Shown here: positions 18,461-56,719 of the stretch, in pieces
Layout of the letters: each line of letters begins with the position of its first letter
Numbering within the stretch: the stretch's first letter is position 1
Virus record (IMG/VR): IMGVR_UViG_3300041411_000080
Location: 62,001 to 126,000 of that record
Strand: one strand, 5' to 3'
Length of the DNA: 64,000 nt
Notes under the pieces: model-generated
The model's database searches: none
Told to the model about the DNA's origin: nothing
What the model saw: the letters and a program-made list of their open reading frames with translations, nothing else
Position numbers and translations under genes: made by a program

Positions 18461-18492
18461 CATAAAGCCTCCCCGAAGGGAGGCAGTATGTC
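18461..18492 (-). terminator. Intrinsic terminator, cUUCGg loop
   Basis: CATAAA-GCCTCCC-CGAA-GGGAGGC-AGTATGTC; near identical to 43887 and 49348. Confidence 0.8.
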
Positions 18493-19099
18493 AGTTACCC
18501 TGCATGGTACCTTCTGTACCTTCGGACGCACGACGTTGGAAACGCTTAGCGATTGCAGCTTGAGCTGCACGAATGTGTTGCAGAACTTCTTCGTTCTCTT
18601 CACAAGCGAACTGGCCTTCTTGGAAGCAGACGTAAGTTTCTTCTACTACTTTAAGCAGGTCTTCGGCAGTAACGCCGTTTACACCCACTTCACTCAGAGG
18701 ACCGCTTTGCAGCAAGATCACACATGCATTCAGGTTATCACCAGCTTCAGCAGCATCGTTAGTCTGTGCATCGAAACCACTGATTACGAAACGCTTAGGA
18801 GCATTCGAACGTGGATCGATAGCGAAGGCTTCAATTACCTTACCACCTTCATCGCCCGATACGATACCAGCTTCGTGATCTTCGATAGAACCCACGATGT
18901 CATGATTGGTATCAGCATTAACTTCATCTCCACCATCGGTGAGAGTTTTGGTTTCGGTATCGCTGTCTTTAACGTCCTTAGGATCAACATCATCGATATC
19001 GATAGAGGACTTTACATTCGTGACGTCTACTACCTGAGCAGTACCGTCTTGTTCGGACTCGAGGCTATTTGCCCAAGCCATAGTTGCAGAAAGACTCAT
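18491..19099 (-). CDS. tad1: Tad1-like cyclic-nucleotide sponge with N-terminal acidic propeptide
   Basis: C-terminal LQSGP..GVNGVTAEDLL..FQEGQFACEEN...H...KRFQRR..GTEGT matches the Tad1 family pattern; AAGGA RBS before ATG 19099. Confidence 0.75.
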   Translation of the reverse strand: MSLSATMAWANSLESEQDGTAQVVDVTNVKSSIDIDDVDPKDVKDSDTETKTLTDGGDEVNADTNHDIVGSIEDHEAGIVSGDEGGKVIEAFAIDPRSNAPKRFVISGFDAQTNDAAEAGDNLNACVILLQSGPLSEVGVNGVTAEDLLKVVEETYVCFQEGQFACEENEEVLQHIRAAQAAIAKRFQRRASEGTEGTMQGN

Positions 19100-19140
19100 T
19101 GGGAATTCCTTGGTTAATGGATTACATAACATAACTGGGA

Positions 19141-19163
19141 ATAAAGTCCTCCCGAAGGAGGAC
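19141..19163 (-). terminator. Intrinsic terminator, cUUCGg loop
   Basis: GTCCTCC-CGAA-GGAGGAC 19146-19163. Confidence 0.75.
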
Positions 19164-19170
19164 AGAATTC

Positions 19171-19713
19171 TTAACCTACGTGCAGTGCCAGCTCAGTCAG
19201 CTGAGCAGCACGATCACTGTTCAGACCCGGCAGTTGAGCGATGATTGCTTTACGCACAATCGAACGACGCTTGATGAAGTTACCTTCAGTTCGAGCTTCA
19301 GTCAGTGCCAGAGCAATCGAAGTCAGCAGTTGACCAGCTTCACCACCAGATACCAGTTGCGCTGCATCTTGGTTAGCAGCGGTGGTCGGTTCGGCATTGT
19401 GATCAGCGATGATCTTACCCATAGCAGCGATAGCGTAGTACTCTGGAGCAGAGTTACGACGGACTTGGCTACGGCACAGTTGCAGGAAGCTACCAGCACG
19501 GTAGTGAGTCAGCAGCAGATCAGTAGCCGCGGCAAGGGCACCCGTATACTCTTTGCTACCCGGAGACAGCAGAGGAGCTTCTTTCTTGAAGAAGCTAATC
19601 GCCATGTCCGCGTTCTCACCGACAGTTTGTTGTGCCAGCAGCCCCGGTAGCAGATCTTCTTTGGTCAGGAAACGGTTAGCGAGGTATTTTACAACGGTTT
19701 TGATAACGGACAT
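19171..19713 (-). CDS. Hypothetical protein, paralog of 19713..20210
   Basis: N-terminus VVKYLANRFLTK vs IIAWLATRFLTK. Confidence 0.75.
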   Translation of the reverse strand: MSVIKTVVKYLANRFLTKEDLLPGLLAQQTVGENADMAISFFKKEAPLLSPGSKEYTGALAAATDLLLTHYRAGSFLQLCRSQVRRNSAPEYYAIAAMGKIIADHNAEPTTAANQDAAQLVSGGEAGQLLTSIALALTEARTEGNFIKRRSIVRKAIIAQLPGLNSDRAAQLTELALHVG

Positions 19714-20210
19714 TAGATAGTCTCCAGGAATTTAGCATCGGCTTCGTAGTTAGTGTGGTTGATGGTCATTGCAATGTTAGCAAGAACACCGATTTCGGTT
19801 TCAGTGAGGCTATGTAGATTCTCACGCAGGATCGTCTTGTAAGTGGCCAGACGTTTCATCGGATTAGCGGCGTCATTGGCGACGAGTTTCTTAAACAGCT
19901 CTTTGTGGTCCTCGCATTCGGCAGACGGACAAAGCATGATGTTTTCTTTGATCGTTTTGTAATACACGAACTTAGCCAGTTCGCCCGTACGGAACGATTG
20001 AAAGAGATGGTTCATTGCTACCGCGTTCAGGTTCTTGCCTGGAGCACTCGAAGGGACATCGTCCAGTGAGTTGTAACGGGCAAACAAACCGCGAAGCACC
20101 TGTACTTCATTGTTACCCTTGACGACCTGATCAATGAAAAGGTCTTGAACATGATACTTAGTCAGGAACCGAGTTGCCAACCAAGCGATAATGCGTTGAA
20201 TCAGATTCAT
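19713..20210 (-). CDS. Hypothetical protein, paralog of 19171..19713 (start revised to MNLIQ)
   Basis: GGAG RBS; avoids overlap with gp182-like gene. Confidence 0.7.
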   Translation of the reverse strand: MNLIQRIIAWLATRFLTKYHVQDLFIDQVVKGNNEVQVLRGLFARYNSLDDVPSSAPGKNLNAVAMNHLFQSFRTGELAKFVYYKTIKENIMLCPSAECEDHKELFKKLVANDAANPMKRLATYKTILRENLHSLTETEIGVLANIAMTINHTNYEADAKFLETI

Positions 20211-20283
20211 TAGGAATCTCCACGAGAGGGAATAAGAGTTAGGGATGCTAGATCCTCTACAGAATCTAACACCCCAGTATTTC

Positions 20284-22305
20284 TTAGAACCGATCAGTGG
20301 TAATTGTAAATGCCGACAGAGTACGTGCAACATCTCCGTCCAAGATCCAAGAAGCAAAGTTGGCAGGAGAGCGCCAAGATTTGAAAGCTTGTACCGAACG
20401 AGTAATGTTAAGGTTCAAACGTTTACCAGCGTAGTAAAGGTCAGAGTAACTCTGAGAGCACAGGGTCGCTACGTAATCGTTGAACAGAGATTGTTCATCC
20501 CATACAGCACCATCTGTTACCGCCAGAGCTGCACCTAGCCCAGCTTCACCACCAACAGCTTCTGCTGCTGTAGCAGTAGCCCACTTAGCACCCGTACCAA
20601 TCCAGCTAGGAGAAGCGAAGCCACCTTTAATAGGAATGTGCATGATCTTCGATAGATCTTTAATTCCGATCGTTACTTCACAACCTAACATGTCGTGGTT
20701 AGCGTTGAAACCTACGTTGCCTGTACCACGACGGATCTGGATAGAGTCAACTATACCCAGCTGACGTTGTACGCGTCCTTTGTGGAAGAGTTGTACGATA
20801 AATGGTGCAGTGTATGCCGATCGACCTGCCGAGCGCGGTAGACCCATTGGAAGGATCATAGCGAGTGGTAGATAGATGTTAAGGAATCGAGAGATTACGT
20901 TACCGTAAGGGGTAATCAAAGGAATCGTGTATTGTGCAGTAGGGAGACTAGCCATAGCTGTATCCCAATACTCAGGTACGTCAACAAACGCAGAACCCGT
21001 AAGTACTGCCAGACCACCTAGGTTCACACTATCCAAAGCACCAGTCGCAAAGTCAAGTAGTCCGCCAGTAACAGCACCTAAACCTTCAGTGATGTTACCA
21101 CCCATGAATTCGAAAGCTTTGTTACGACCTTCACTAACCTTCGTGTTCAACGTTTGGATTACCCCAACGTCTTTAGTCGAGTTAGTAAAGCTTTCGGATA
21201 CCTCACCGTTGTAGTCAGCCCGCAAGGTAACGAATTGTGCACCGTCGTGTTGTGCACCAACGATGTATTTGTACATGTGTGTCAGATCGGACCAACTGGA
21301 GAAGAAGTCGTTATCGATAACCCCGGTCTCATCTTTACTGCCACTGCCTTTCTTATCTTTCTTCAGATAGTCTAAGTAATAAGCTCGTGCATCTTGACCC
21401 GGATTAGGATCGACTACTGCTTGACTCATTGCCTTCTCAGTTGAGTTACGAAGTTCCTCAATAGATCTAGCCTTCTCAGCCATTGCCTTAAATTCACGGT
21501 TTGACGCATCCGCCATTCGTTGAGCACGACCTGCCAGTGCCATTACGTCAACACCGCCATCTGGACGGAACAATTGTGGGAAGATCCGGTGAAGCTCTTT
21601 CATATCTTGCAGAGTACCTTGCGCACCCGGCATGGTACTATCAGCGGTAACCCTTAGTTGTCCTGGGTCAGTACCGGGCGCTGATTCGTTAGCCCAGAAC
21701 CAAGGAGTAATACCGAGACCGATTGCAAATTCGTTTGCAAGGGTGTTAACCGAAGACCAGTAAGTGTGCATGGTCGGTTTAAAGTAGAACCACTTAGAAG
21801 GCTGAGACTTAGTCAAGAAACTAATAACGTTCATTGTACCAGTCAAGCCGAGGATAAACGGCTGTGCCGGCAAAGATACCAACAGACCAGCAGCGTTACC
21901 CAGGTTATACCACAGTCCAGTACCTGCACCAGTGTTGGCCATCGATGCTGCACTACGGTCGTAAAAGTTGGTGAAGAAACTCGACCAGCTACTGAATCGA
22001 GGTACACCGAAAGACATGTGGATTTCTTGCTTAGTATCGTCATGGGCTTCAGAGTAATACCGTCCCATGCCTAGAAATCGGTCTTCATAGCTACGTCCAC
22101 GACCCGGCTGACGAATGTCGCAGTAACGGGTATATTGCGGCAGCATGTTAATTGGGAAGCTACCACCGGGGGACGTATTCGTAAATTTGAATGCGGCAGA
22201 GTTTGCTCTTCGGCGTTTGGTATTGGAACCATAACTGCCTTTTTCATAACTGACTGGAAGCATGAAAGCCTTCCGTAGCCAGATGGGTTGTAAGTCTTCG
22301 GCCAT
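20284..22305 (-). CDS. Tail/baseplate structural protein, phiKZ gp182-like
   Basis: Directly downstream of tape measure gene; 673 aa; synteny. Confidence 0.7.
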
Positions 22306-35811: not shown

Positions 35812-37803
35812 ATGTACCAATCCGAAACTATGGACGCTGTCCGTGACGCAGCCCAGACGTTGACTCGGGAAGGTAAAGTACTGACCATGGGGAACCCTGA
35901 GTTCCCTTTGGCTGTATTCGCCGACACCTACAAAGTTGACGCAGAGCCGACCAACACTGCGCTCCCTGATGAAGAGATCGTAGCTGTTGAAGAACACTTC
36001 GATGAGATCAACCAAGACACCACTCCGGCTGAAGATGATTCCCGTGAAGGTATTGTTGCTAACTTGGGCCAAGCTGTAGCCAAGGTTCAGTTCAACACTA
36101 CCAACGTGATTATCCCTGCTATTAAAGCAATGCATCAAGCTTACGCTAGTATGCAAGCTGCTTCTTGCCAACCTGAGTACTCGGTTAAGGCTTGGCGTTA
36201 TCTGGCTCCTCACAACAGCGCTACGCTGGTTAACCACATCAACACTCGGTACACTACCGTTCGTCCGAAAGACTCTTATAAGTCGTTCGCTCTGGAAGGC
36301 CAGTCTGCTGAAGCCATTATCGAAATGATGGCGGTCAACAACCCACACCTCGAACAAGAGGAAGTAACTGAGTGGGCTCTGGAAGTTGGTAGTGCTCGTG
36401 TTGAAGCTGTGTGGAACTCGCTGTTTACCACTGGCCATGTAATGCCGGGTGGTCTGCCTTACCTTTCAGCTCAATCTGCACCGTTTAACGTTGACGACAT
36501 TCTGGTTGCTTATCTGATTTGCGGCCACTACATCGACAACCCAGTTGTGGTTCCTAACATCTCCGTTGATCTGGAAGAGTGGGAACACACCATGAAACTG
36601 TTGCACGAAATGTTCGGCTTCTATCTGATGCGCGCTTACGTGCGTCGTGCTGACATGCGTGAACAGGGTGTGATGATCCTGAAGAACGAGGCTACCAACC
36701 CAATCGCTACCCGTAAAGCAGTTGTTACTGTTAACGGTGACGTGTTCGATCCATGGGTTGTAGGTGGTGGTGACATTCAAGCTATTCTGGGCGCTGCTGT
36801 TGAGAACACTGGCGTCACTGACGTTAAGTATCTGGACGCCGCTGCACACAAGTTCATTGAACGCTGGCATGAAGTTTACCCACTGATTCAACAAGCGGCT
36901 ATCGACTATTCTGATCGTCAGCGGATGAACAACGTTATTACTACCTTCCGTGAAATCGGTCGTAGTGAACTGTTGAAAGACCGTTACACTCCAGAAACTG
37001 AAACTGCTCTGATTGATGCACTCCGTTACGTACGTCGTGACGATTACGAGAATCCATACAAGGTCTTCTCGAATCTGATCTGCCGTGTTTACTTCCCTGA
37101 ATCGACTTACCTCGAATATCTGGATGCTATCGATCAACATGGTCAAACCTTTACCAAGGCTTCTGTTCGTGAACTGGCTACCCAAGCGATGATCTCGCTG
37201 GTTGCTATCTTCCAAGCGAAGCAGATCAAGGTTGAAGGGTTTATCCCTGAGATTGATCCAGAAGGTTCGGCTGGTGGTCCTATTGATGACTCCGGTCTCT
37301 TGGCGATTACTGATGATGAAGCTCCTGAAGAAACCGCTGATGGCATTGAAGGTGAAATCGGTGACACTGGCGAAGTGGGTGATACCGGCGTGGTTGATGA
37401 TCTCACTGGCGATGATGCTGGCATGGACGATCTTGCTGGCGGCACTGACGGTGGTCTGGACGATGCAGCTGATAGCTTGGGTGGTGATGACACTGCTCTC
37501 GATACCGATCTCGGTGGGACTGATACTGAAGCGGCTGTAGGTGAAGCTACTGATGTAGAAGAAGACTTCTCTGCTGAACCAGAGGAAGAAGATCCATACG
37601 CTGAACTGGAAACCGGTGAAGCTGATGACGTGGAAGAAGAGTCGGAAGAAGTTGAATCTGAGGAAACTACAGAAGAGACCGAAGAAGAATCTGAGTCCGC
37701 TGAGGTAGAAGAAGAATCCGAAGAGACTACTGAGGAAACTGACGTCGAAGAGACTGAAGAATCCGAGGAAGAAACTGAAGAAGACGACACCCCTTTAGCG
37801 TAA
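35812..37803 (+). CDS. Virion head protein, phiKZ gp177-like, with long acidic C-terminal tail
   Basis: GGAG RBS; synteny between vRNAP beta and protease; E/D-rich last ~170 aa. Confidence 0.75.
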   Translation: MYQSETMDAVRDAAQTLTREGKVLTMGNPEFPLAVFADTYKVDAEPTNTALPDEEIVAVEEHFDEINQDTTPAEDDSREGIVANLGQAVAKVQFNTTNVIIPAIKAMHQAYASMQAASCQPEYSVKAWRYLAPHNSATLVNHINTRYTTVRPKDSYKSFALEGQSAEAIIEMMAVNNPHLEQEEVTEWALEVGSARVEAVWNSLFTTGHVMPGGLPYLSAQSAPFNVDDILVAYLICGHYIDNPVVVPNISVDLEEWEHTMKLLHEMFGFYLMRAYVRRADMREQGVMILKNEATNPIATRKAVVTVNGDVFDPWVVGGGDIQAILGAAVENTGVTDVKYLDAAAHKFIERWHEVYPLIQQAAIDYSDRQRMNNVITTFREIGRSELLKDRYTPETETALIDALRYVRRDDYENPYKVFSNLICRVYFPESTYLEYLDAIDQHGQTFTKASVRELATQAMISLVAIFQAKQIKVEGFIPEIDPEGSAGGPIDDSGLLAITDDEAPEETADGIEGEIGDTGEVGDTGVVDDLTGDDAGMDDLAGGTDGGLDDAADSLGGDDTALDTDLGGTDTEAAVGEATDVEEDFSAEPEEEDPYAELETGEADDVEEESEEVESEETTEETEEESESAEVEEESEETTEETDVEETEESEEETEEDDTPLA

Positions 37804-39645: not shown

Positions 39646-40515
39646 ATGAACCTAGGTATTATCCGAGGGAGAACGATCCCTAACCCATCTGGCCAAGTAC
39701 CTCTGTCTCAGACAGCGGTTACTGTTGGCTGTGCAATGCTGGCTGGTACTAATAAGCGAGGCATCCTACCTGCGGATGCCAGCGGTTACTACACTCTCGT
39801 AGTGGGTAGCTATGGTACACATAACTCAGCTGGTATGTTTTATGATGAAGCATCTGGCTGTGCAATGTTTGAGCCTTCGAGTTCTTTGATGAGACGTCTT
39901 AAGAAAGGCGTGTTGTTCATGGAGTTCAAACACCCTGAACCATTCCAAGATCTGATGATCGATGGTCGGGTTGTCCGCAGACCAATGTCGGATGCTGAGT
40001 ACCTGATGCGCATTCGTCAAATCGACGATAACCGTGTATGTGCACACATTCGTAATCTGACTATCGTTGATGGTATTAACGAACAGGGTAAACCAGTTAA
40101 GATGGTCGTGGCTGAAGTTAAGCCTTACGGTCCATACGCTAAAGTCTTCCAAGACTCTCTGGATAACCCAAGCATCAACACTTACTGCTCGGTTCGTTCG
40201 ATCACTCAAGACGATCAATACCGTGGCATTAAGTACACTCGTGAAATCGCTACTTGGGACTTCGTGGGTGAAGGTGGTATCTTTACCGCTAACAAATATA
40301 CTTCTCCTGGACTGGAGAACTATACTGCTGAAGAAGCAATGATTATCCCTGAACGTCAGATCACACCAGACGTACTTTGGAAGATCCAAGATGACAACCA
40401 AAAGCGAACCTTGCTTGGGTTGGAATCTGCTGAACACCGTGATGTATCGGAGCTGATCAAGATTCTTGATTGGGATCGGTCTAAAGGTGTTCGTCGTCCT
40501 AACTACCTCCGTTAA
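39646..40515 (+). CDS. Prohead (head maturation) serine protease, phiKZ gp175-like
   Basis: EFKHP (His), CSVRS (Ser), TWDFV motifs; start revised to MNLGII. Confidence 0.85.
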   Translation: MNLGIIRGRTIPNPSGQVPLSQTAVTVGCAMLAGTNKRGILPADASGYYTLVVGSYGTHNSAGMFYDEASGCAMFEPSSSLMRRLKKGVLFMEFKHPEPFQDLMIDGRVVRRPMSDAEYLMRIRQIDDNRVCAHIRNLTIVDGINEQGKPVKMVVAEVKPYGPYAKVFQDSLDNPSINTYCSVRSITQDDQYRGIKYTREIATWDFVGEGGIFTANKYTSPGLENYTAEEAMIIPERQITPDVLWKIQDDNQKRTLLGLESAEHRDVSELIKILDWDRSKGVRRPNYLR

Positions 40516-53681: not shown

Positions 53682-54878
53682 TTACACACCAGTTGTTTCG
53701 TAGTGATCGATACAGTGGTTGATGAAGGTAAGCCAAACACTCAGAGTAATAGCCAGCCAGTGAGTGAAGTTATCCAATGGCTCAGCGAGCTTCTTGGAGA
53801 TCTCCCCTGTGATCTGGAGTACAAGGTTAGAGGCTGGAACGGTTTCACCCGAATCAGTCTTTTCCATGATCTGACGAATGGAATCATCTACTACTGTTTT
53901 AACCGTATCGAAATCCCGACGACCAGCTTCAGCTTTCTCAGCCAGAGTCAGTACACGAGAGATCTCTTCTGTCAACAGAGTCAAGTCCCGAACAGAGGGA
54001 ACATCGATTTCGCGTTCAGAGCGGTCAGCTACGTTCAACTGAAGTTCAGTGAAGTGCATGATAAAGCTAGAACTTACGATATCTGCCGGATCAGTCTTAC
54101 CACGACGCAAAGCTTCAGTCATGCCTTCTGGAGACATATAAACGAAGGCTCTGTTACCAGCCAGTACATCACTACGACGATGGTTCTTCTTATCGAGTCC
54201 ACTCATCTCTCCCGATTTAACTTCAGTAGCACCCGGTGGAGCACGGAAGTTAGTTTGGAATACATCAATGAATGTTTCGATTACATCGTGTGCAGTTTGC
54301 TGACGTTCTTGACCTTCAGCGTTTTCGAGAATGTTAAGGAACTTACGACTGCAATTACGAGCGATCTGCGTTACGCTCTTTGGATAGATGTTCAGGCAAT
54401 AGTTGGTGAGTTGCTTGATGTCCTCAATGGCACTTTGCTCCACACCTACGAACTTACCGTCTACCGACAAGCGTTGTACACCTGCTACCGCCATCGTAGA
54501 TTGAAGTGAGGTCTTAGACCCCAGCTTACCCAAACGACGAATAGTGGACTCTTGGCTACGACGTACCCGACGGATACTACCCGTAAACTTAATGTACATC
54601 GCGTTAAGGAATTGCCAGATCTGTTTAATGATCTTCCATGCTGCACTTGCCCCAGCAGAGATGGCTTCCTTAATTGCACGCAATGTAATGGCACCACCCT
54701 CTTTGATATCGAACTCAGGGTCGATGTTCTCAAGAGCAGTACTCATTACAAATGCGATGTCGTCACTCGCTCTTTCCTGTCCAGCTAGGAGTTGTTCATA
54801 GCGTTCCAAGGATTGAGTGAGTCGTACCACCTTGTCCCAATTCTCAAGCAAAGGCTTCAATTCAGATGTTGGGTTCAT
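53682..54878 (-). CDS. Inner-body/head protein, phiKZ gp163-like paralog family
   Basis: STALE cleavage-like site; V-x-G-x-x-RL-x-x-x-x-x-FVG and L-x-GN-x-A motifs shared with neighbour. Confidence 0.7.
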   Translation of the reverse strand: MNPTSELKPLLENWDKVVRLTQSLERYEQLLAGQERASDDIAFVMSTALENIDPEFDIKEGGAITLRAIKEAISAGASAAWKIIKQIWQFLNAMYIKFTGSIRRVRRSQESTIRRLGKLGSKTSLQSTMAVAGVQRLSVDGKFVGVEQSAIEDIKQLTNYCLNIYPKSVTQIARNCSRKFLNILENAEGQERQQTAHDVIETFIDVFQTNFRAPPGATEVKSGEMSGLDKKNHRRSDVLAGNRAFVYMSPEGMTEALRRGKTDPADIVSSSFIMHFTELQLNVADRSEREIDVPSVRDLTLLTEEISRVLTLAEKAEAGRRDFDTVKTVVDDSIRQIMEKTDSGETVPASNLVLQITGEISKKLAEPLDNFTHWLAITLSVWLTFINHCIDHYETTGV

Positions 54879-54892
54879 GTGGTACTTCCTTA

Positions 54893-56719
54893 TTAAGCGT
54901 CGATGGTATTGCCAGCAGCTTCCGCCTTGAGCGAAGCTTCAAGGAAACCAATGTAAGCTTTGATCATGTTGATCAGGTAACCCAAGAAACGATGTTGCGA
55001 TTCAGTAGAGGTCTTAGCCAGATTCATCACCATGATACCAGCAACTTGACCTTCAGCACCACCAGAACCGGTGAACAGATCCATGAACGCGTCTTGGTTA
55101 GCACCCTGAGTGAACTTCTTCAGTTCACGCATGCCATCTTTAGAATCCTGGATGAATTGGCAGAGTTTCTCCAGCTCACGGATTACCGATACAGCTTCAC
55201 CAGCCGATGGAGTAGTTACAGGAGTGTCGCTCGAACGCGAGTCACCACCTGGGATCAGGCTGAAGTTCAGAGTTACAGCGTTCTGAGCATCTTCCATCGA
55301 ACCTTCGACGCCAGCTTTACCCGAGTTAGCGATGCCAGCGTAAAGAGCCATGTTACCAGGCATTGGACCGGTCCAATGCAGACGATCTACACCCAAGAAG
55401 CCAGACGGTACTTTGTCTTTGTCACCGGAGTTCAGTTGATCGAAGCTACGGAAGGCACGGTCAAGTGCGGTATCCAAGCCACCGATAACAGCACCCATTG
55501 CAGCGCCACCATTACCACCGAAGATACCACGACCTTTCTCCCAGTCTTGGATAATCTTAGCGAGGCTATTAGGCCAGTTCATCAGAAGTTCTTGGGAGAC
55601 CTTATGCACTTGGGCAATAGCCTTCGAAGAGTCACCTACGAACTCATCGCCAATCATCAGACGACCAGGGTTCTTCATGGTGAATTCTTTATCACCTTCA
55701 AGAACGTTAACACGTTTACGCAGGTCAACCAAGTGCTGCTTGATCTTACCAGTGTCGGTAGCCAAGGAAGCGATCAGGTCGGAAACCATGTTAACCATAC
55801 GCCAGAAAATCTTAACGCCGGCTTTAAACATTTCTTTGAGCTTGCCACCAAGACCTTTGGATACTTCACCTGGATCTGCGCCGTCATCAATAGTACCGGA
55901 CTTACCAGCACCAACTGCACCTACAGCGTTAGCTTCCAGAGATACACGTGCTTCTGGGTTAAACGATTCCAGAGCAACACGTTCACGAAGGAACATCTGC
56001 GAGTCGATATCTTCCAGTGCCCACGAGATCGATTGACGGAGTTCATCCGACATATAACGACCTTCGTTATGCATACGTACCATCAGACCGTGATATTTCT
56101 CAACAGTAGCGGTAGCTTTGCTCAGGGATTCAGCTTTAGCAGCAACCGAGTCTACTTCAGCCAGCTTCGATTCAGCTGCATCGGTCATACCGGTAACTTG
56201 CAGTTCTTCACCGTCAAGGTCCATAACCAGATCGTCAGCTTTCTCGATCTCTTCAGCGCCCGAGGCGTCGATGGATTTCAGTTCGGTGGATTCAGCGTTG
56301 TCACCACCTTCTTCCTCTTCACCCGAGTGTTCTTCTACCGAAGTAGAGATGTCACTCTTAGACAGACCGTCTTTGGCTTTGACATCGTTAGGCAGGGTGT
56401 CGATATCACGACCACCGTTCTGATCACGATTCAGGTTTTCGTTGACGTCACTAACGTCCATCGAAGTAGTAGCAGTCTTAACGTCTACAGTTTGAGCGGT
56501 ACCATCACCACCACCATTCTCAGGACCGGGTTCGGTAGTCTTGGTGTTGGTAGCATCAGCTTTCGGCAGGTCGTCTGCTTCCAGTGGCTTAGGATCGTTG
56601 GTGGCGTTGGATGGGATGTCTTTAGAAGCGTCCAGTGCAACGTTATCTACGTTGGCGGTGGAAATGCTTTCTTTGGAAACAATGGAGTTAACCATTTCGA
56701 AAATACTTAGGCGAGCCAT
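54893..56719 (-). CDS. Inner-body/head protein, phiKZ gp162-like, with long acidic propeptide
   Basis: Acidic N-terminal region with S/A-x-E sites (SKE, SVE, ALE, SLE); paralogous to 53682..54878. Confidence 0.75.
   Translation of the reverse strand: MARLSIFEMVNSIVSKESISTANVDNVALDASKDIPSNATNDPKPLEADDLPKADATNTKTTEPGPENGGGDGTAQTVDVKTATTSMDVSDVNENLNRDQNGGRDIDTLPNDVKAKDGLSKSDISTSVEEHSGEEEEGGDNAESTELKSIDASGAEEIEKADDLVMDLDGEELQVTGMTDAAESKLAEVDSVAAKAESLSKATATVEKYHGLMVRMHNEGRYMSDELRQSISWALEDIDSQMFLRERVALESFNPEARVSLEANAVGAVGAGKSGTIDDGADPGEVSKGLGGKLKEMFKAGVKIFWRMVNMVSDLIASLATDTGKIKQHLVDLRKRVNVLEGDKEFTMKNPGRLMIGDEFVGDSSKAIAQVHKVSQELLMNWPNSLAKIIQDWEKGRGIFGGNGGAAMGAVIGGLDTALDRAFRSFDQLNSGDKDKVPSGFLGVDRLHWTGPMPGNMALYAGIANSGKAGVEGSMEDAQNAVTLNFSLIPGGDSRSSDTPVTTPSAGEAVSVIRELEKLCQFIQDSKDGMRELKKFTQGANQDAFMDLFTGSGGAEGQVAGIMVMNLAKTSTESQHRFLGYLINMIKAYIGFLEASLKAEAAGNTIDA

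What the first reader, a model, noticed from the sequence alone, without database searches (positions are those of the whole stretch)
18986..19048. 21-aa motif shared between the sponge leader and the gp162-like inner-body propeptide: candidate head-targeting signal
Seen: DGTAQVVDVTNVKSSIDIDDV (18986-19048) aligns with DGTAQTVDVKTATTSMDVSDV (56444-56506, in 54893..56719) at 12/21 identities plus conservative changes, although the mature domains are unrelated. A downstream [SA][VI]E[ED]H motif recurs in the sponge (SIEDH), the gp162-like protein (SVEEH) and the gp177-like protein (AVEEH). Inference: a portable propeptide module, captured from an inner-body gene, addresses cargo into the jumbo-phage head.
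Basis: partly seen in the sequence, partly recalled or inferred. Interest (0 to 1): 0.8.

Follow-up and report, generated by a model that had tools for sequence, protein, structure and literature searches.

The report
Shared capsid-anchor leader on packaged Tad1 sponge
A jumbo Pseudomonas-type phage carries an anti-immunity "sponge" protein (Tad1) whose cleavable N-terminal leader is genuinely related to the capsid-binding front end of an inner-head protein, which most likely loads the sponge into the phage head for injection; this is already described for the model phage phiKZ, so it is a new example with one new detail.

Summary
Both motifs lie on the minus strand at the stated coordinates and share 12 of 21 residues; the next-best match in the genome is 8 of 21, and no shuffle exceeded 10. 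The similarity is part of a longer homologous module of about 60 residues. It runs from DG-T-A-Q to the S-[IV]-E|[ED]-H site (profile-profile E = 1e-7).

The "sponge" is a 202-aa ortholog of phiKZ gp184/Tad1 and 201phi2-1 gp280. Its true start is the ATG at 19099, not 19132. The partner is the gp162 ortholog (PF12699).

In phiKZ, published work shows that gp184 is head-packaged, cut by the gp175 protease and injected. The gp162 segment that carries DGTA stays bound to the inner capsid wall. A Peptidase_S80 protease lies in the window.

The best reading is a capsid-wall anchor plus protease-release cassette that loads Tad1 into the head. The module is old: it is present in at least five phage genera, and its DNA is only 62% identical between the two genes. 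A search of 1.84 billion protein representatives found it in these two families only. It is therefore neither a recent capture nor a general address tag. Verdict: new member of a known kind, moderate interest.

The parts
18491..19099 (-). Tad1-like gene (202 aa, stop included); ortholog of phiKZ gp184/Tad1 and 201phi2-1 gp280
   Evidence: PDB sequence search: 8y6v_I gp184 E = 3e-34, Tad1 8kbb E = 4e-8. 67% identity to 201phi2-1 gp280. All metagenomic orthologs are about 202 aa and start MSLS.... AAGGA ribosome-binding site before ATG 19099.
19058..19099 (-). Short N-terminal leader, aa 1-14, ending S-L-E|S (predicted first protease cut)
   Evidence: W9, A10 and E14 are invariant or nearly so in 15-16 orthologs. 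phiKZ gp184 shows the same pattern...ASLE|S at residue 13; gp162 has ASLE17|R18, a published cut site (PMC11297242).
18881..19057 (-). Anchor module, aa 15-73, homologous to aa 70-129 of the gp162-like protein
   Evidence: hhalign of the two family profiles: probability 94.3%, E = 1e-7, 73 columns. Joint alignment A4 needs only one 3-residue indel. Mean identity to orthologs is 76%, close to the 82% of the Tad1 domain.
18986..19048 (-). Core 21-aa motif DGTAQVVDVTNVKSSIDIDDV (aa 18-38), as reported
18875..18889 (-). S71-I72-E73|D74-H75, predicted second protease cut that frees the Tad1 domain
   Evidence: S71 and E73 are nearly invariant in orthologs. An S-x-E stands at the same alignment position in 201phi2-1, Viktualia, Phabio, PhiPA3 and PA1C. 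It fits the published S/A/G-x-E specificity (PMC9026906, PMC10449902).
18494..18856 (-). Tad1 (Acb2_Tad1_hairpin) cargo domain, aa about 82-202
   Evidence: AlphaFold2 model pLDDT 85.6. The top 20 Foldseek PDB hits are all Tad1 structures, TM about 0.7, probability 1.0. Orthologs carry precomputed PF24729.
19146..19163 (-). Terminator-like hairpin of the upstream gene, just before the spurious ATG at 19132
   Evidence: 7-bp stem with 5 GC pairs, T-rich tail.
54893..56719 (-). gp162-like internal head protein gene (608 aa)
   Evidence: PF12699 phiKZ_IP E = 1.8e-42. phrog_8282 internal head protein E = 7e-134. Ortholog of 201phi2-1 gp246, a virion protein by mass spectrometry and similar to phiKZ gp162.
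56333..56668 (-). gp162N-like region, aa 18-129, between predicted cuts S-K-E17|S and S-V-E129|E
   Evidence: E17, S127, V128 and E129 are invariant in 31 orthologs; mean column identity of A1 (aa 1-150) is 60%. The region aligns with phiKZ gp162 residues 18-137, the capsid-bound fragment gp162N/gp162II (PMC11297242).
56444..56506 (-). Core motif DGTAQTVDVKTATTSMDVSDV (aa 72-92), as reported
   Evidence: G73 and A75 are invariant, and D72 and T74 nearly invariant, in 31 orthologs. Aligns with DGTA 71-74 of phiKZ gp162, the start of its second capsid-binding half (PMC11297242).
56327..56341 (-). S127-V128-E129|E130-H131, predicted protease cut
   Evidence: S-V-E is invariant and H131 nearly invariant.
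35812..37803 (+). gp177-like virion protein (663 aa) with A-V-E|E-H at aa 58-62 (35983-35997)
   Evidence: 70% identity to 201phi2-1 gp271, which is similar to phiKZ gp177 and found by mass spectrometry. phiKZ gp177 was shown to be cleaved and injected (PMC10449902). It shares only the cut-site pattern, not the module.
39667..40512 (+). Head maturation protease (Peptidase_S80, gp175/gp268 ortholog)
   Evidence: PF20034 E = 5e-89. 80% identity to 201phi2-1 gp268.

Best explanation
The 21-aa motif is the best-conserved stretch of a module of about 60 residues. Two head proteins of a phiKZ-like (201phi2-1 clade) jumbo phage share it: the Tad1 sponge (gp184 ortholog) and the gp162-like internal head protein.

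Both proteins have the same layout:
1. A short hydrophobic leader of 14 or 17 residues ending in S-x-E.
2. The module, which starts at D-G-T-A-Q.
3. A conserved S-[IV]-E cut site.
4. The cargo domain.

By homology with phiKZ gp162N, the module most likely lies on the inner face of the major-capsid-protein lattice as extended strands while the prohead assembles, and so recruits the attached cargo (inferred). The Peptidase_S80 head protease encoded 20 kb away then cuts after E14 and E73 (inferred from motif conservation and orthologs). This frees the Tad1 domain inside the head.

The freed Tad1 domain leaves with the DNA at the next infection, where it can soak up Thoeris/CBASS signalling nucleotides before any phage gene is expressed. 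Injection is shown for phiKZ gp184 and inferred here.

Shown here: the homology, the conservation, the Tad1 fold, the presence of the protease, and the restriction of the module to two families.
For: Homology of the leaders:
- Pairwise E = 2e-4.
- Profile-profile probability 94.3%, E = 1e-7, covering Tad1 residues 17-94 and gp162-like residues 70-149.
- The core 24 columns alone still give E = 1e-7.

Specificity:
- A motif profile hits only these two ORFs in the genome (E = 2.5e-12 and 7e-11; the next hit is 1.9).
- An exhaustive search of 1.84e9 representatives returns only gp162-like and Tad1-like proteins.

Constraint:
- The leader is about as conserved as the Tad1 domain (76% versus 82%).
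- The cut-site residues are invariant or nearly so.

Cargo:
- Tad1 fold.

Machinery:
- Peptidase_S80 in the window.

Literature:
- phiKZ gp162 is cut at E17|R18 and E137|D138. Residues 19-134 form a fibre on the inner capsid wall with two S-shaped halves (19-66 and 67-134) that pair strand-to-strand with the capsid protein (PMC11297242). DGTA of phiKZ gp162 is residues 71-74.
- phiKZ gp184 is a cleaved inner-capsid protein (PMC11297242) and was validated as injected (PMC10449902).
- gp184 is described as Tad1, whose N-terminus is wedged in the capsid and whose C-terminus is freed by the protease and injected (bioRxiv 10.1101/2025.11.23.690004).

One result fits that description. The Tad1-domain model does not hit 8y6v chain I, although that chain is the best PDB sequence match to this domain (E = 3e-34). 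The ordered capsid-bound part of gp184 is therefore not the Tad1 domain.

Same-genome pairs of the two motifs are more alike than cross-genome pairs (10 genomes, permutation p = 0.007/0.017). This fits a shared binding partner.
Against: - No direct evidence exists for this phage: no virion proteome, no structure.
- AlphaFold2 gives no confident structure for the leader (pLDDT about 30). That is expected for a segment that folds on binding, but it is not support.
- phiKZ gp184 itself has only a degenerate form of the motif, plus an extra strand-rich mini-domain that this protein lacks. It is still packaged, so the motif is not strictly needed in the whole family, and the phiKZ gp184 structure cannot be transferred directly.
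- Only two of the many processed head proteins carry the module.
- The first half of the gp162N-like region shows no detectable similarity to the module.
- The covariation test is not corrected for relatedness.
- Placing the motif in a strand 'arm' rests on proportional mapping to gp93 and gp162II in a paper, not on coordinates I could inspect.
Confidence: 0.6

Rival explanations
1. T4-style capsid targeting. The real address is the short N-terminal peptide (aa 1-14 in Tad1, aa 1-17 in the gp162-like protein), which ends in S-x-E and binds an assembly core. The DGTAQ module is only a structural cement or spacer that both proteins inherited.
For: Short leaders ending in S-x-E stand at the front of several head proteins in this genome, for example ...GSKE|D and ...VSVE|E in PF12699 paralogs. 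They also occur in phiKZ gp93 (E13|S14), gp162 (E17|R18) and gp184 (PMC11297242). In T4, 10 N-terminal residues of IPIII suffice for packaging (PMC9026906). W9, A10 and E14 are conserved.
Against: The two short leaders are not detectably similar to each other (hhalign E = 0.14). The module is under strong constraint and is the part shared by two otherwise unrelated proteins. In phiKZ the region after the first cut is what is seen bound to the capsid (PMC11297242).
Confidence: 0.2
2. Disposable acidic propeptide. The module is removed and expelled after cleavage. Its role would be to keep Tad1 monomeric or inactive, or to balance charge in the prohead, rather than to anchor it to the capsid wall.
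For: The region is very acidic and predicted disordered. In T4 and phiKZ many propeptides are degraded at redundant sites and lost (PMC9026906). Extra S/A/G-x-E sites lie nearby, such as G-D-E just after the module.
Against: The homologous gp162N fragment is retained and ordered in mature phiKZ capsids (PMC11297242). Conservation of specific non-acidic positions (G19, A21, V/I pattern) across genera is more than a charge requirement.
Confidence: 0.12
3. Recent capture or gene conversion in this genome. The Tad1 gene picked up a piece of the neighbouring inner-body gene, or the reverse, not long ago.
For: The gp162-like motif of the window is the gp162-family motif most similar to Tad1 leaders in general. 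Same-genome pairs are somewhat more alike than cross-genome pairs.
Against: DNA identity is 39/63, and only 4 of the 12 identical residues use the same codon. The DGTAQTVDV state is the family consensus in 31 gp162-like orthologs. The module is present in Tad1 orthologs of five named phages in separate genera.
Confidence: 0.04
4. Chance similarity of two low-complexity acidic segments.
For: Both regions are rich in D, E, T and V. The S-[IV]-E-[ED]-H pentapeptide count (3) is only mildly above expectation (0.6-1.3).
Against: Composition-adjusted BLASTP E = 2e-4. No shuffle reached 11 of 21. Profile-profile E = 1e-7. Conservation in both families.
Confidence: 0.02

Closest known systems
phiKZ gp184 (Tad1), the packaged and injected Thoeris/CBASS sponge (PDB 8Y6V chain I)
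   Same: Orthologous Tad1 domain (E = 3e-34). Same gene neighbourhood, next to the gp182-like gene. N-terminal extension with a short leader ending S-L-E. Published as cleaved by gp175, attached to the inner capsid and injected (PMC11297242, PMC10449902, bioRxiv 10.1101/2025.11.23.690004).
   Different: The phiKZ leader is 109 aa. It has only a degenerate trace of the DGTAQ motif and carries an extra strand-rich mini-domain. The window's leader is about 80 aa and clearly matches gp162N.
phiKZ gp162N / gp162II and gp93 N-terminal arms (fibre-like minor capsid proteins)
   Same: The window's gp162-like protein aligns with phiKZ gp162, with the first cut site and DGTA (71-74) at matching positions and the second cut site in a similar position. 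The Tad1 leader is homologous to the second half of this region.
   Different: In phiKZ the similarity between gp184 and gp162 is not visible in sequence. I found no paper among those read that reports this cross-family homology. The capsid binding of the Tad1 leader is inferred, not seen.
T4 capsid targeting sequence (CTS) of internal proteins IPI/IPII/IPIII
   Same: An N-terminal, protease-removed segment shared by proteins with unrelated mature parts. The cut falls after glutamate in a short motif. The cargo is injected and can be anti-defence (PMC9026906).
   Different: The T4 CTS is 10-19 residues and binds the scaffolding core. Here the shared element is about 60 residues, follows a first cut site, and by homology binds the capsid shell and may stay there.
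Stand-alone Tad1 of Bacillus, Clostridium and other phages (7UAV, 8SMD, 8KBB)
   Same: Same fold (TM about 0.7, probability 1.0).
   Different: Those proteins are about 120-140 aa with no leader, as the solved Tad1 chains show, and are made after infection. In the tblastn search, records other than the 15 full-length Pseudomonas jumbo-phage matches (the listed ones being phiKZ-type phages) match only residues about 94-213.

Membership tests
Tad1 (Acb2_Tad1_hairpin, PF24729) sponge | Sequence match to characterised Tad1 proteins | tested here: met
   phmmer versus PDB: CmTad1 8kbb E = 4e-8, CbTad1 about 2e-3, phiKZ gp184 E = 3e-34. Orthologs carry precomputed PF24729. The local Pfam copy gave no hit.
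Tad1 (Acb2_Tad1_hairpin, PF24729) sponge | Tad1 fold: antiparallel sheet followed by two long helices | tested here: met
   AlphaFold2 model pLDDT 85.6 with 4 strands and 2 helices. The top 20 Foldseek hits are all Tad1, TM 0.63-0.74.
Tad1 (Acb2_Tad1_hairpin, PF24729) sponge | Binds gcADPR and cyclic oligonucleotides; blocks Thoeris/CBASS | not testable with these tools
   Needs binding and plaque assays. Ligand-contact residues were not checked.
phiKZ gp184-type packaged Tad1 | Conserved gene neighbourhood (gp182-like gene, two small genes, then Tad1) | tested here: met
   Window order is 673-aa gp182-like, 214-aa, 180-aa, Tad1-like, all on the minus strand. 201phi2-1 has gp277-gp280 in the same order.
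phiKZ gp184-type packaged Tad1 | Present in virions, cleaved by the head protease, injected | not testable with these tools
   Known for phiKZ (PMC10449902, PMC11297242), and virion presence is known for 201phi2-1 gp280. Here only the conserved S-x-E sites and the protease gene are seen.
phiKZ_IP internal head proteins (PF12699), gp162 subgroup | PF12699 domain above the curated cut-off | tested here: met
   146.4 bits against a cut-off of 27. It is one of seven such ORFs in the genome, six above the cut-off.
phiKZ_IP internal head proteins (PF12699), gp162 subgroup | Long N-terminal region bounded by two S-x-E cuts, equivalent to gp162N | tested here: met
   E17 and S127-V128-E129 are invariant in 31 orthologs. 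Aligned with phiKZ gp162 E17 and DGTA 71-74; phiKZ E137 lies in a similar position to the second site. Cleavage itself was not tested.
Substrates of the Peptidase_S80 (gp175-type) prohead protease | S/A/G-x-E motif at conserved positions, and a cognate protease in the genome | tested here: met
   for the sites; for the protease (PF20034, E = 5e-89).
T4-type capsid targeting sequence | First 10-19 residues suffice for packaging; binds the scaffold core | not tested
   Only an analogy. The element shared here lies after the first cut site and is about 60 residues long.

The most novel reading that the evidence does not exclude
The Tad1 leader is a derived copy of the second capsid-binding unit of gp162N. 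This defines a self-contained cassette of about 60 residues: a wall anchor plus a protease release site. Chimalliviruses would use it to load non-structural cargo at fixed sites on the inner capsid lattice. Natural variants with extra domains inserted just after the cut site (P0055, P0042) show the junction is used to add cargo. The same-genome covariation reflects co-evolution of both anchors with one site on the capsid protein.
Probability: 0.35. Interest if true: 0.6.

Novelty: new member of a known kind. Interest (0 to 1): 0.4.

Why it matters
Pre-loading an immune-signal sponge into the virion lets the phage blunt Thoeris/CBASS signalling from the first seconds of infection. This has been described only for phiKZ. 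The window shows that the arrangement is conserved in the 201phi2-1 clade and in about 40 related protein clusters, nearly all from metagenomic assemblies.

In this clade, unlike in phiKZ, the sequence still shows where the leader came from: it matches the capsid-binding front end of gp162. That gives a concrete, minimal segment (aa 15-73 plus its cut site) to test as the packaging determinant. It also offers a rationale for how unrelated cargo gets into jumbo-phage heads.

Tried and rejected
1. Megablast of the locus against phage records found nothing; protein-level searches were needed.
2. Pfam gave no hit for the Tad1-like protein in the local copy. Its identity came from the PDB sequence search and the fold.
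3. The full-length AlphaFold2 model with 16 close orthologs was unusable (pLDDT 38). A domain-only model with 39 sequences worked.
4. I wanted to model phiKZ gp184 itself to see which residues are ordered in 8Y6V. The third protein search returned only close relatives, and the KTN4 locus is not an allowed input. Instead I used the absence of 8y6v_I among the fold hits.
5. PF03420 (T4 protease family) found nothing. The protease belongs to PF20034.
6. I tested for an internal repeat in the gp162N-like region and for similarity between the two short leaders. Neither was significant.
7. The papers with the original cleavage maps (PMC2871425, PMC3323674, PMC3719823) and the Nature paper on Tad1 (PMC12159963) are not held.
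8. The inserts of P0055 and P0042 have no significant PHROG match.
9. Recent gene conversion was considered and rejected on codon evidence.

Full report
**What is there.**
The two peptides are real but lie on the minus strand. The first is residues 29-49 of a 213-aa ORF (18491..19132). The second is residues 72-92 of a 608-aa ORF (54893..56719). They share 12 of 21 residues. BLASTP of the whole proteins gives E = 2e-4 for this segment and nothing else.

The genome is a complete 320,858-bp virus record with 46.6% G+C. Across all its six-frame ORFs the next-best match to the 21-mer is 8 of 21, and 200 shuffles of the motif reached at most 10. That pentapeptide count is only mildly above the 0.6-1.3 expected.

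**What the two proteins are.**
The 608-aa protein is a PF12699 internal head protein. It is the ortholog of 201phi2-1 gp246 and phiKZ gp162.

The other protein is a Tad1 sponge:
- Its C-terminal 120 residues match phiKZ gp184 (PDB 8Y6V chain I, E = 3e-34) and solved Tad1 proteins (E = 4e-8).
- A domain model with pLDDT 85.6 hits only Tad1 structures in its top 20.
- Its nearest named relatives are 201phi2-1 gp280 (67% identity, found in virions by mass spectrometry), Viktualia, Phabio and PhiPA3.

The gene really starts at ATG 19099. That codon has an AAGGA ribosome-binding site. The ATG at 19132 sits directly behind a terminator hairpin (19163..19146). All the metagenomic orthologs examined are about 202 aa, and those read in full start at the equivalent position. 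In this numbering the motif is residues 18-38.

**The similarity is a module, not just a motif.**
Alignments of 15 Tad1-type leaders and 31 gp162-type N-terminal regions are each strongly conserved. Compared as profiles, they align over 73 columns with probability 94.3% and E = 1e-7. The alignment covers Tad1 residues 17-94 and gp162-like residues 70-149. It runs from D-G-T-A through ...HDIVGSIE|DH in one protein and ...SDISTSVE|EH in the other. A joint alignment needs only one 3-residue indel.

Both proteins therefore share one layout:
1. A short leader ending in S-x-E (E14 or E17, invariant).
2. The module.
3. A second, conserved S-[IV]-E site (E73 or E129).
4. The cargo domain.

The module is nearly as conserved as the Tad1 domain (76% versus 82% mean identity).

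**How widespread it is.**
The motif is present in both families in 201phi2-1, Viktualia, Phabio, PhiPA3 and PA1C. DGTA is also present in gp162 of Psa21 and phiKZ, while phiKZ gp184 keeps only a degenerate trace.

A motif profile finds only the two proteins in this genome (E = 2.5e-12 and 7e-11; the next hit is 1.9). A profile of the whole module, searched against 1.84 billion representatives, returns eight proteins, and all are gp162-like or Tad1-like.

Two of those eight are variants with an extra domain inserted just after the cut site. One is a 300-aa Tad1-like protein whose roughly 100-residue insert has its own S-V-E site. The other is an 826-aa gp162-like protein with a duplicated cut-site region.

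The two DNA copies in the window are only 39/63 identical, and most shared residues use different codons. DGTAQTVDV is the consensus state of the gp162 family. The sharing is therefore old and maintained at the protein level.

In ten genomes where both genes are known, same-genome motif pairs are more alike than cross-genome pairs (p = 0.007 by score, 0.017 by identity). This is suggestive only, because relatedness is not corrected for.

**What it most likely does.**
The published phiKZ capsid structure shows gp162 cut at E17|R18 and E137|D138. Residues 19-134 remain as a fibre on the inner capsid wall. That fibre has two S-shaped halves (19-66 and 67-134) that pair strand-to-strand with the N-arm and P-domain of the capsid protein (PMC11297242). 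In my alignment the DGTA of phiKZ gp162 is residues 71-74, at the start of the second half. The Tad1 leader is thus homologous to a segment that is seen bound to the capsid shell.

For gp184 itself, three sources bear on its fate:
- PMC11297242 places it in the inner vertex-binding complex and reports that it is cleaved.
- PMC10449902 validated gp184 and gp177 as injected proteins.
- A 2025 preprint describes gp184/Tad1 as having its N-terminus wedged in the capsid and its C-terminus freed by the protease and injected (10.1101/2025.11.23.690004).

My Tad1-domain model does not hit 8y6v chain I, even though that chain is the best PDB sequence match to this domain (E = 3e-34). So the ordered capsid-bound part of gp184 is not the Tad1 domain, which agrees with the preprint's description.

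The window also encodes the Peptidase_S80 protease (39667..40512). The third protein with A-V-E|E-H is the gp177 ortholog.

I therefore read the module as a capsid-wall anchor plus release site that loads Tad1 into the head (confidence about 0.6).

**Limits and rivals.**
Nothing was measured for this phage. The leader has no confident predicted structure. phiKZ gp184 is packaged with a diverged leader that carries an extra mini-domain, so its structure cannot be transferred directly.

The main rival is that the short 14-17-residue leader is a T4-like targeting peptide and the module is only structural. Similar short leaders ending in S-x-E precede other head proteins here. However, the two leaders are not detectably alike. 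A disposable acidic propeptide, a recent capture and chance similarity are each less likely, for the reasons set out in the report's rival-explanations section.

**Verdict.**
The module is shared by two families only, it is ancient, and its homolog is retained in the capsid rather than discarded. Packaged, cleaved and injected Tad1 is already described for phiKZ. What appears new, in the papers I could read, is the sequence homology between the Tad1 leader and the second half of gp162N. It is visible in this clade but not in phiKZ.

Noticed in passing
window 19099-19163 (-): The mechanical ORF starts at ATG 19132, right behind a terminator-like hairpin (19163..19146). The real start is ATG 19099, which has an AAGGA site. 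The first-stage '213-aa' protein is really 202 aa.
   Followed up: yes
P0055 (locus L017:449-1351) and P0042: Natural variants carry an extra domain inserted just after the module's cut site. One is a 300-aa Tad1-like protein with a helical insert of about 100 aa and its own S-V-E|D site. The other is an 826-aa gp162-like protein with an insert of about 220 aa and a duplicated ...SNE|EH region. The inserts have no significant PHROG match.
   Followed up: partly
window 18986-19048 and 56444-56506, compared with nine other genomes: Tad1-leader and gp162-like motifs from the same genome resemble each other more than cross-genome pairs do. Examples are a shared DVDKN in one contig and a shared F-T..AK.A in another. 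Permutation p is about 0.01, uncorrected for relatedness.
   Followed up: partly
window 19171-20357 (-): The two small ORFs between the gp182-like gene and Tad1 share an N-terminal ...[YW]LA[NT]RFLTK... motif and look like paralogs. They correspond to 201phi2-1 gp278/gp279. The 214-aa ORF probably starts at an internal Met (MNLIQRII...).
   Followed up: no
window 53682-54878 (-): The gp163-like PF12699 paralog directly downstream of the gp162-like gene lacks the long N-terminal module. It has only a short N-terminal region with ...QSLE|R at residues 22-25.
   Followed up: no
window 54866-56710 (+): A 614-aa open frame runs antisense across the whole gp162-like gene, and its translation even contains VDVTNV opposite the motif. 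It has no homologs and looks like a by-product of the codon composition, not a gene.
   Followed up: no
genome G000 192103-198043 (-), outside the window: The cluster of gp93/95/97-like PF12699 paralogs carries short N-terminal leaders ending in S-x-E (MSFFHLSKLVGSKE|D and MSLFKEAMADVGVSVE|EF). None carries the DGTAQ module.
   Followed up: partly
locus L006:271-963 (KTN4, a phiKZ strain, gp184): The phiKZ gp184 leader has a strand-rich mini-domain of about 30 aa (around residues 75-105) that is absent from the 201phi2-1-clade proteins. It may be the ordered, strand-rich part reported in 8Y6V.
   Followed up: no
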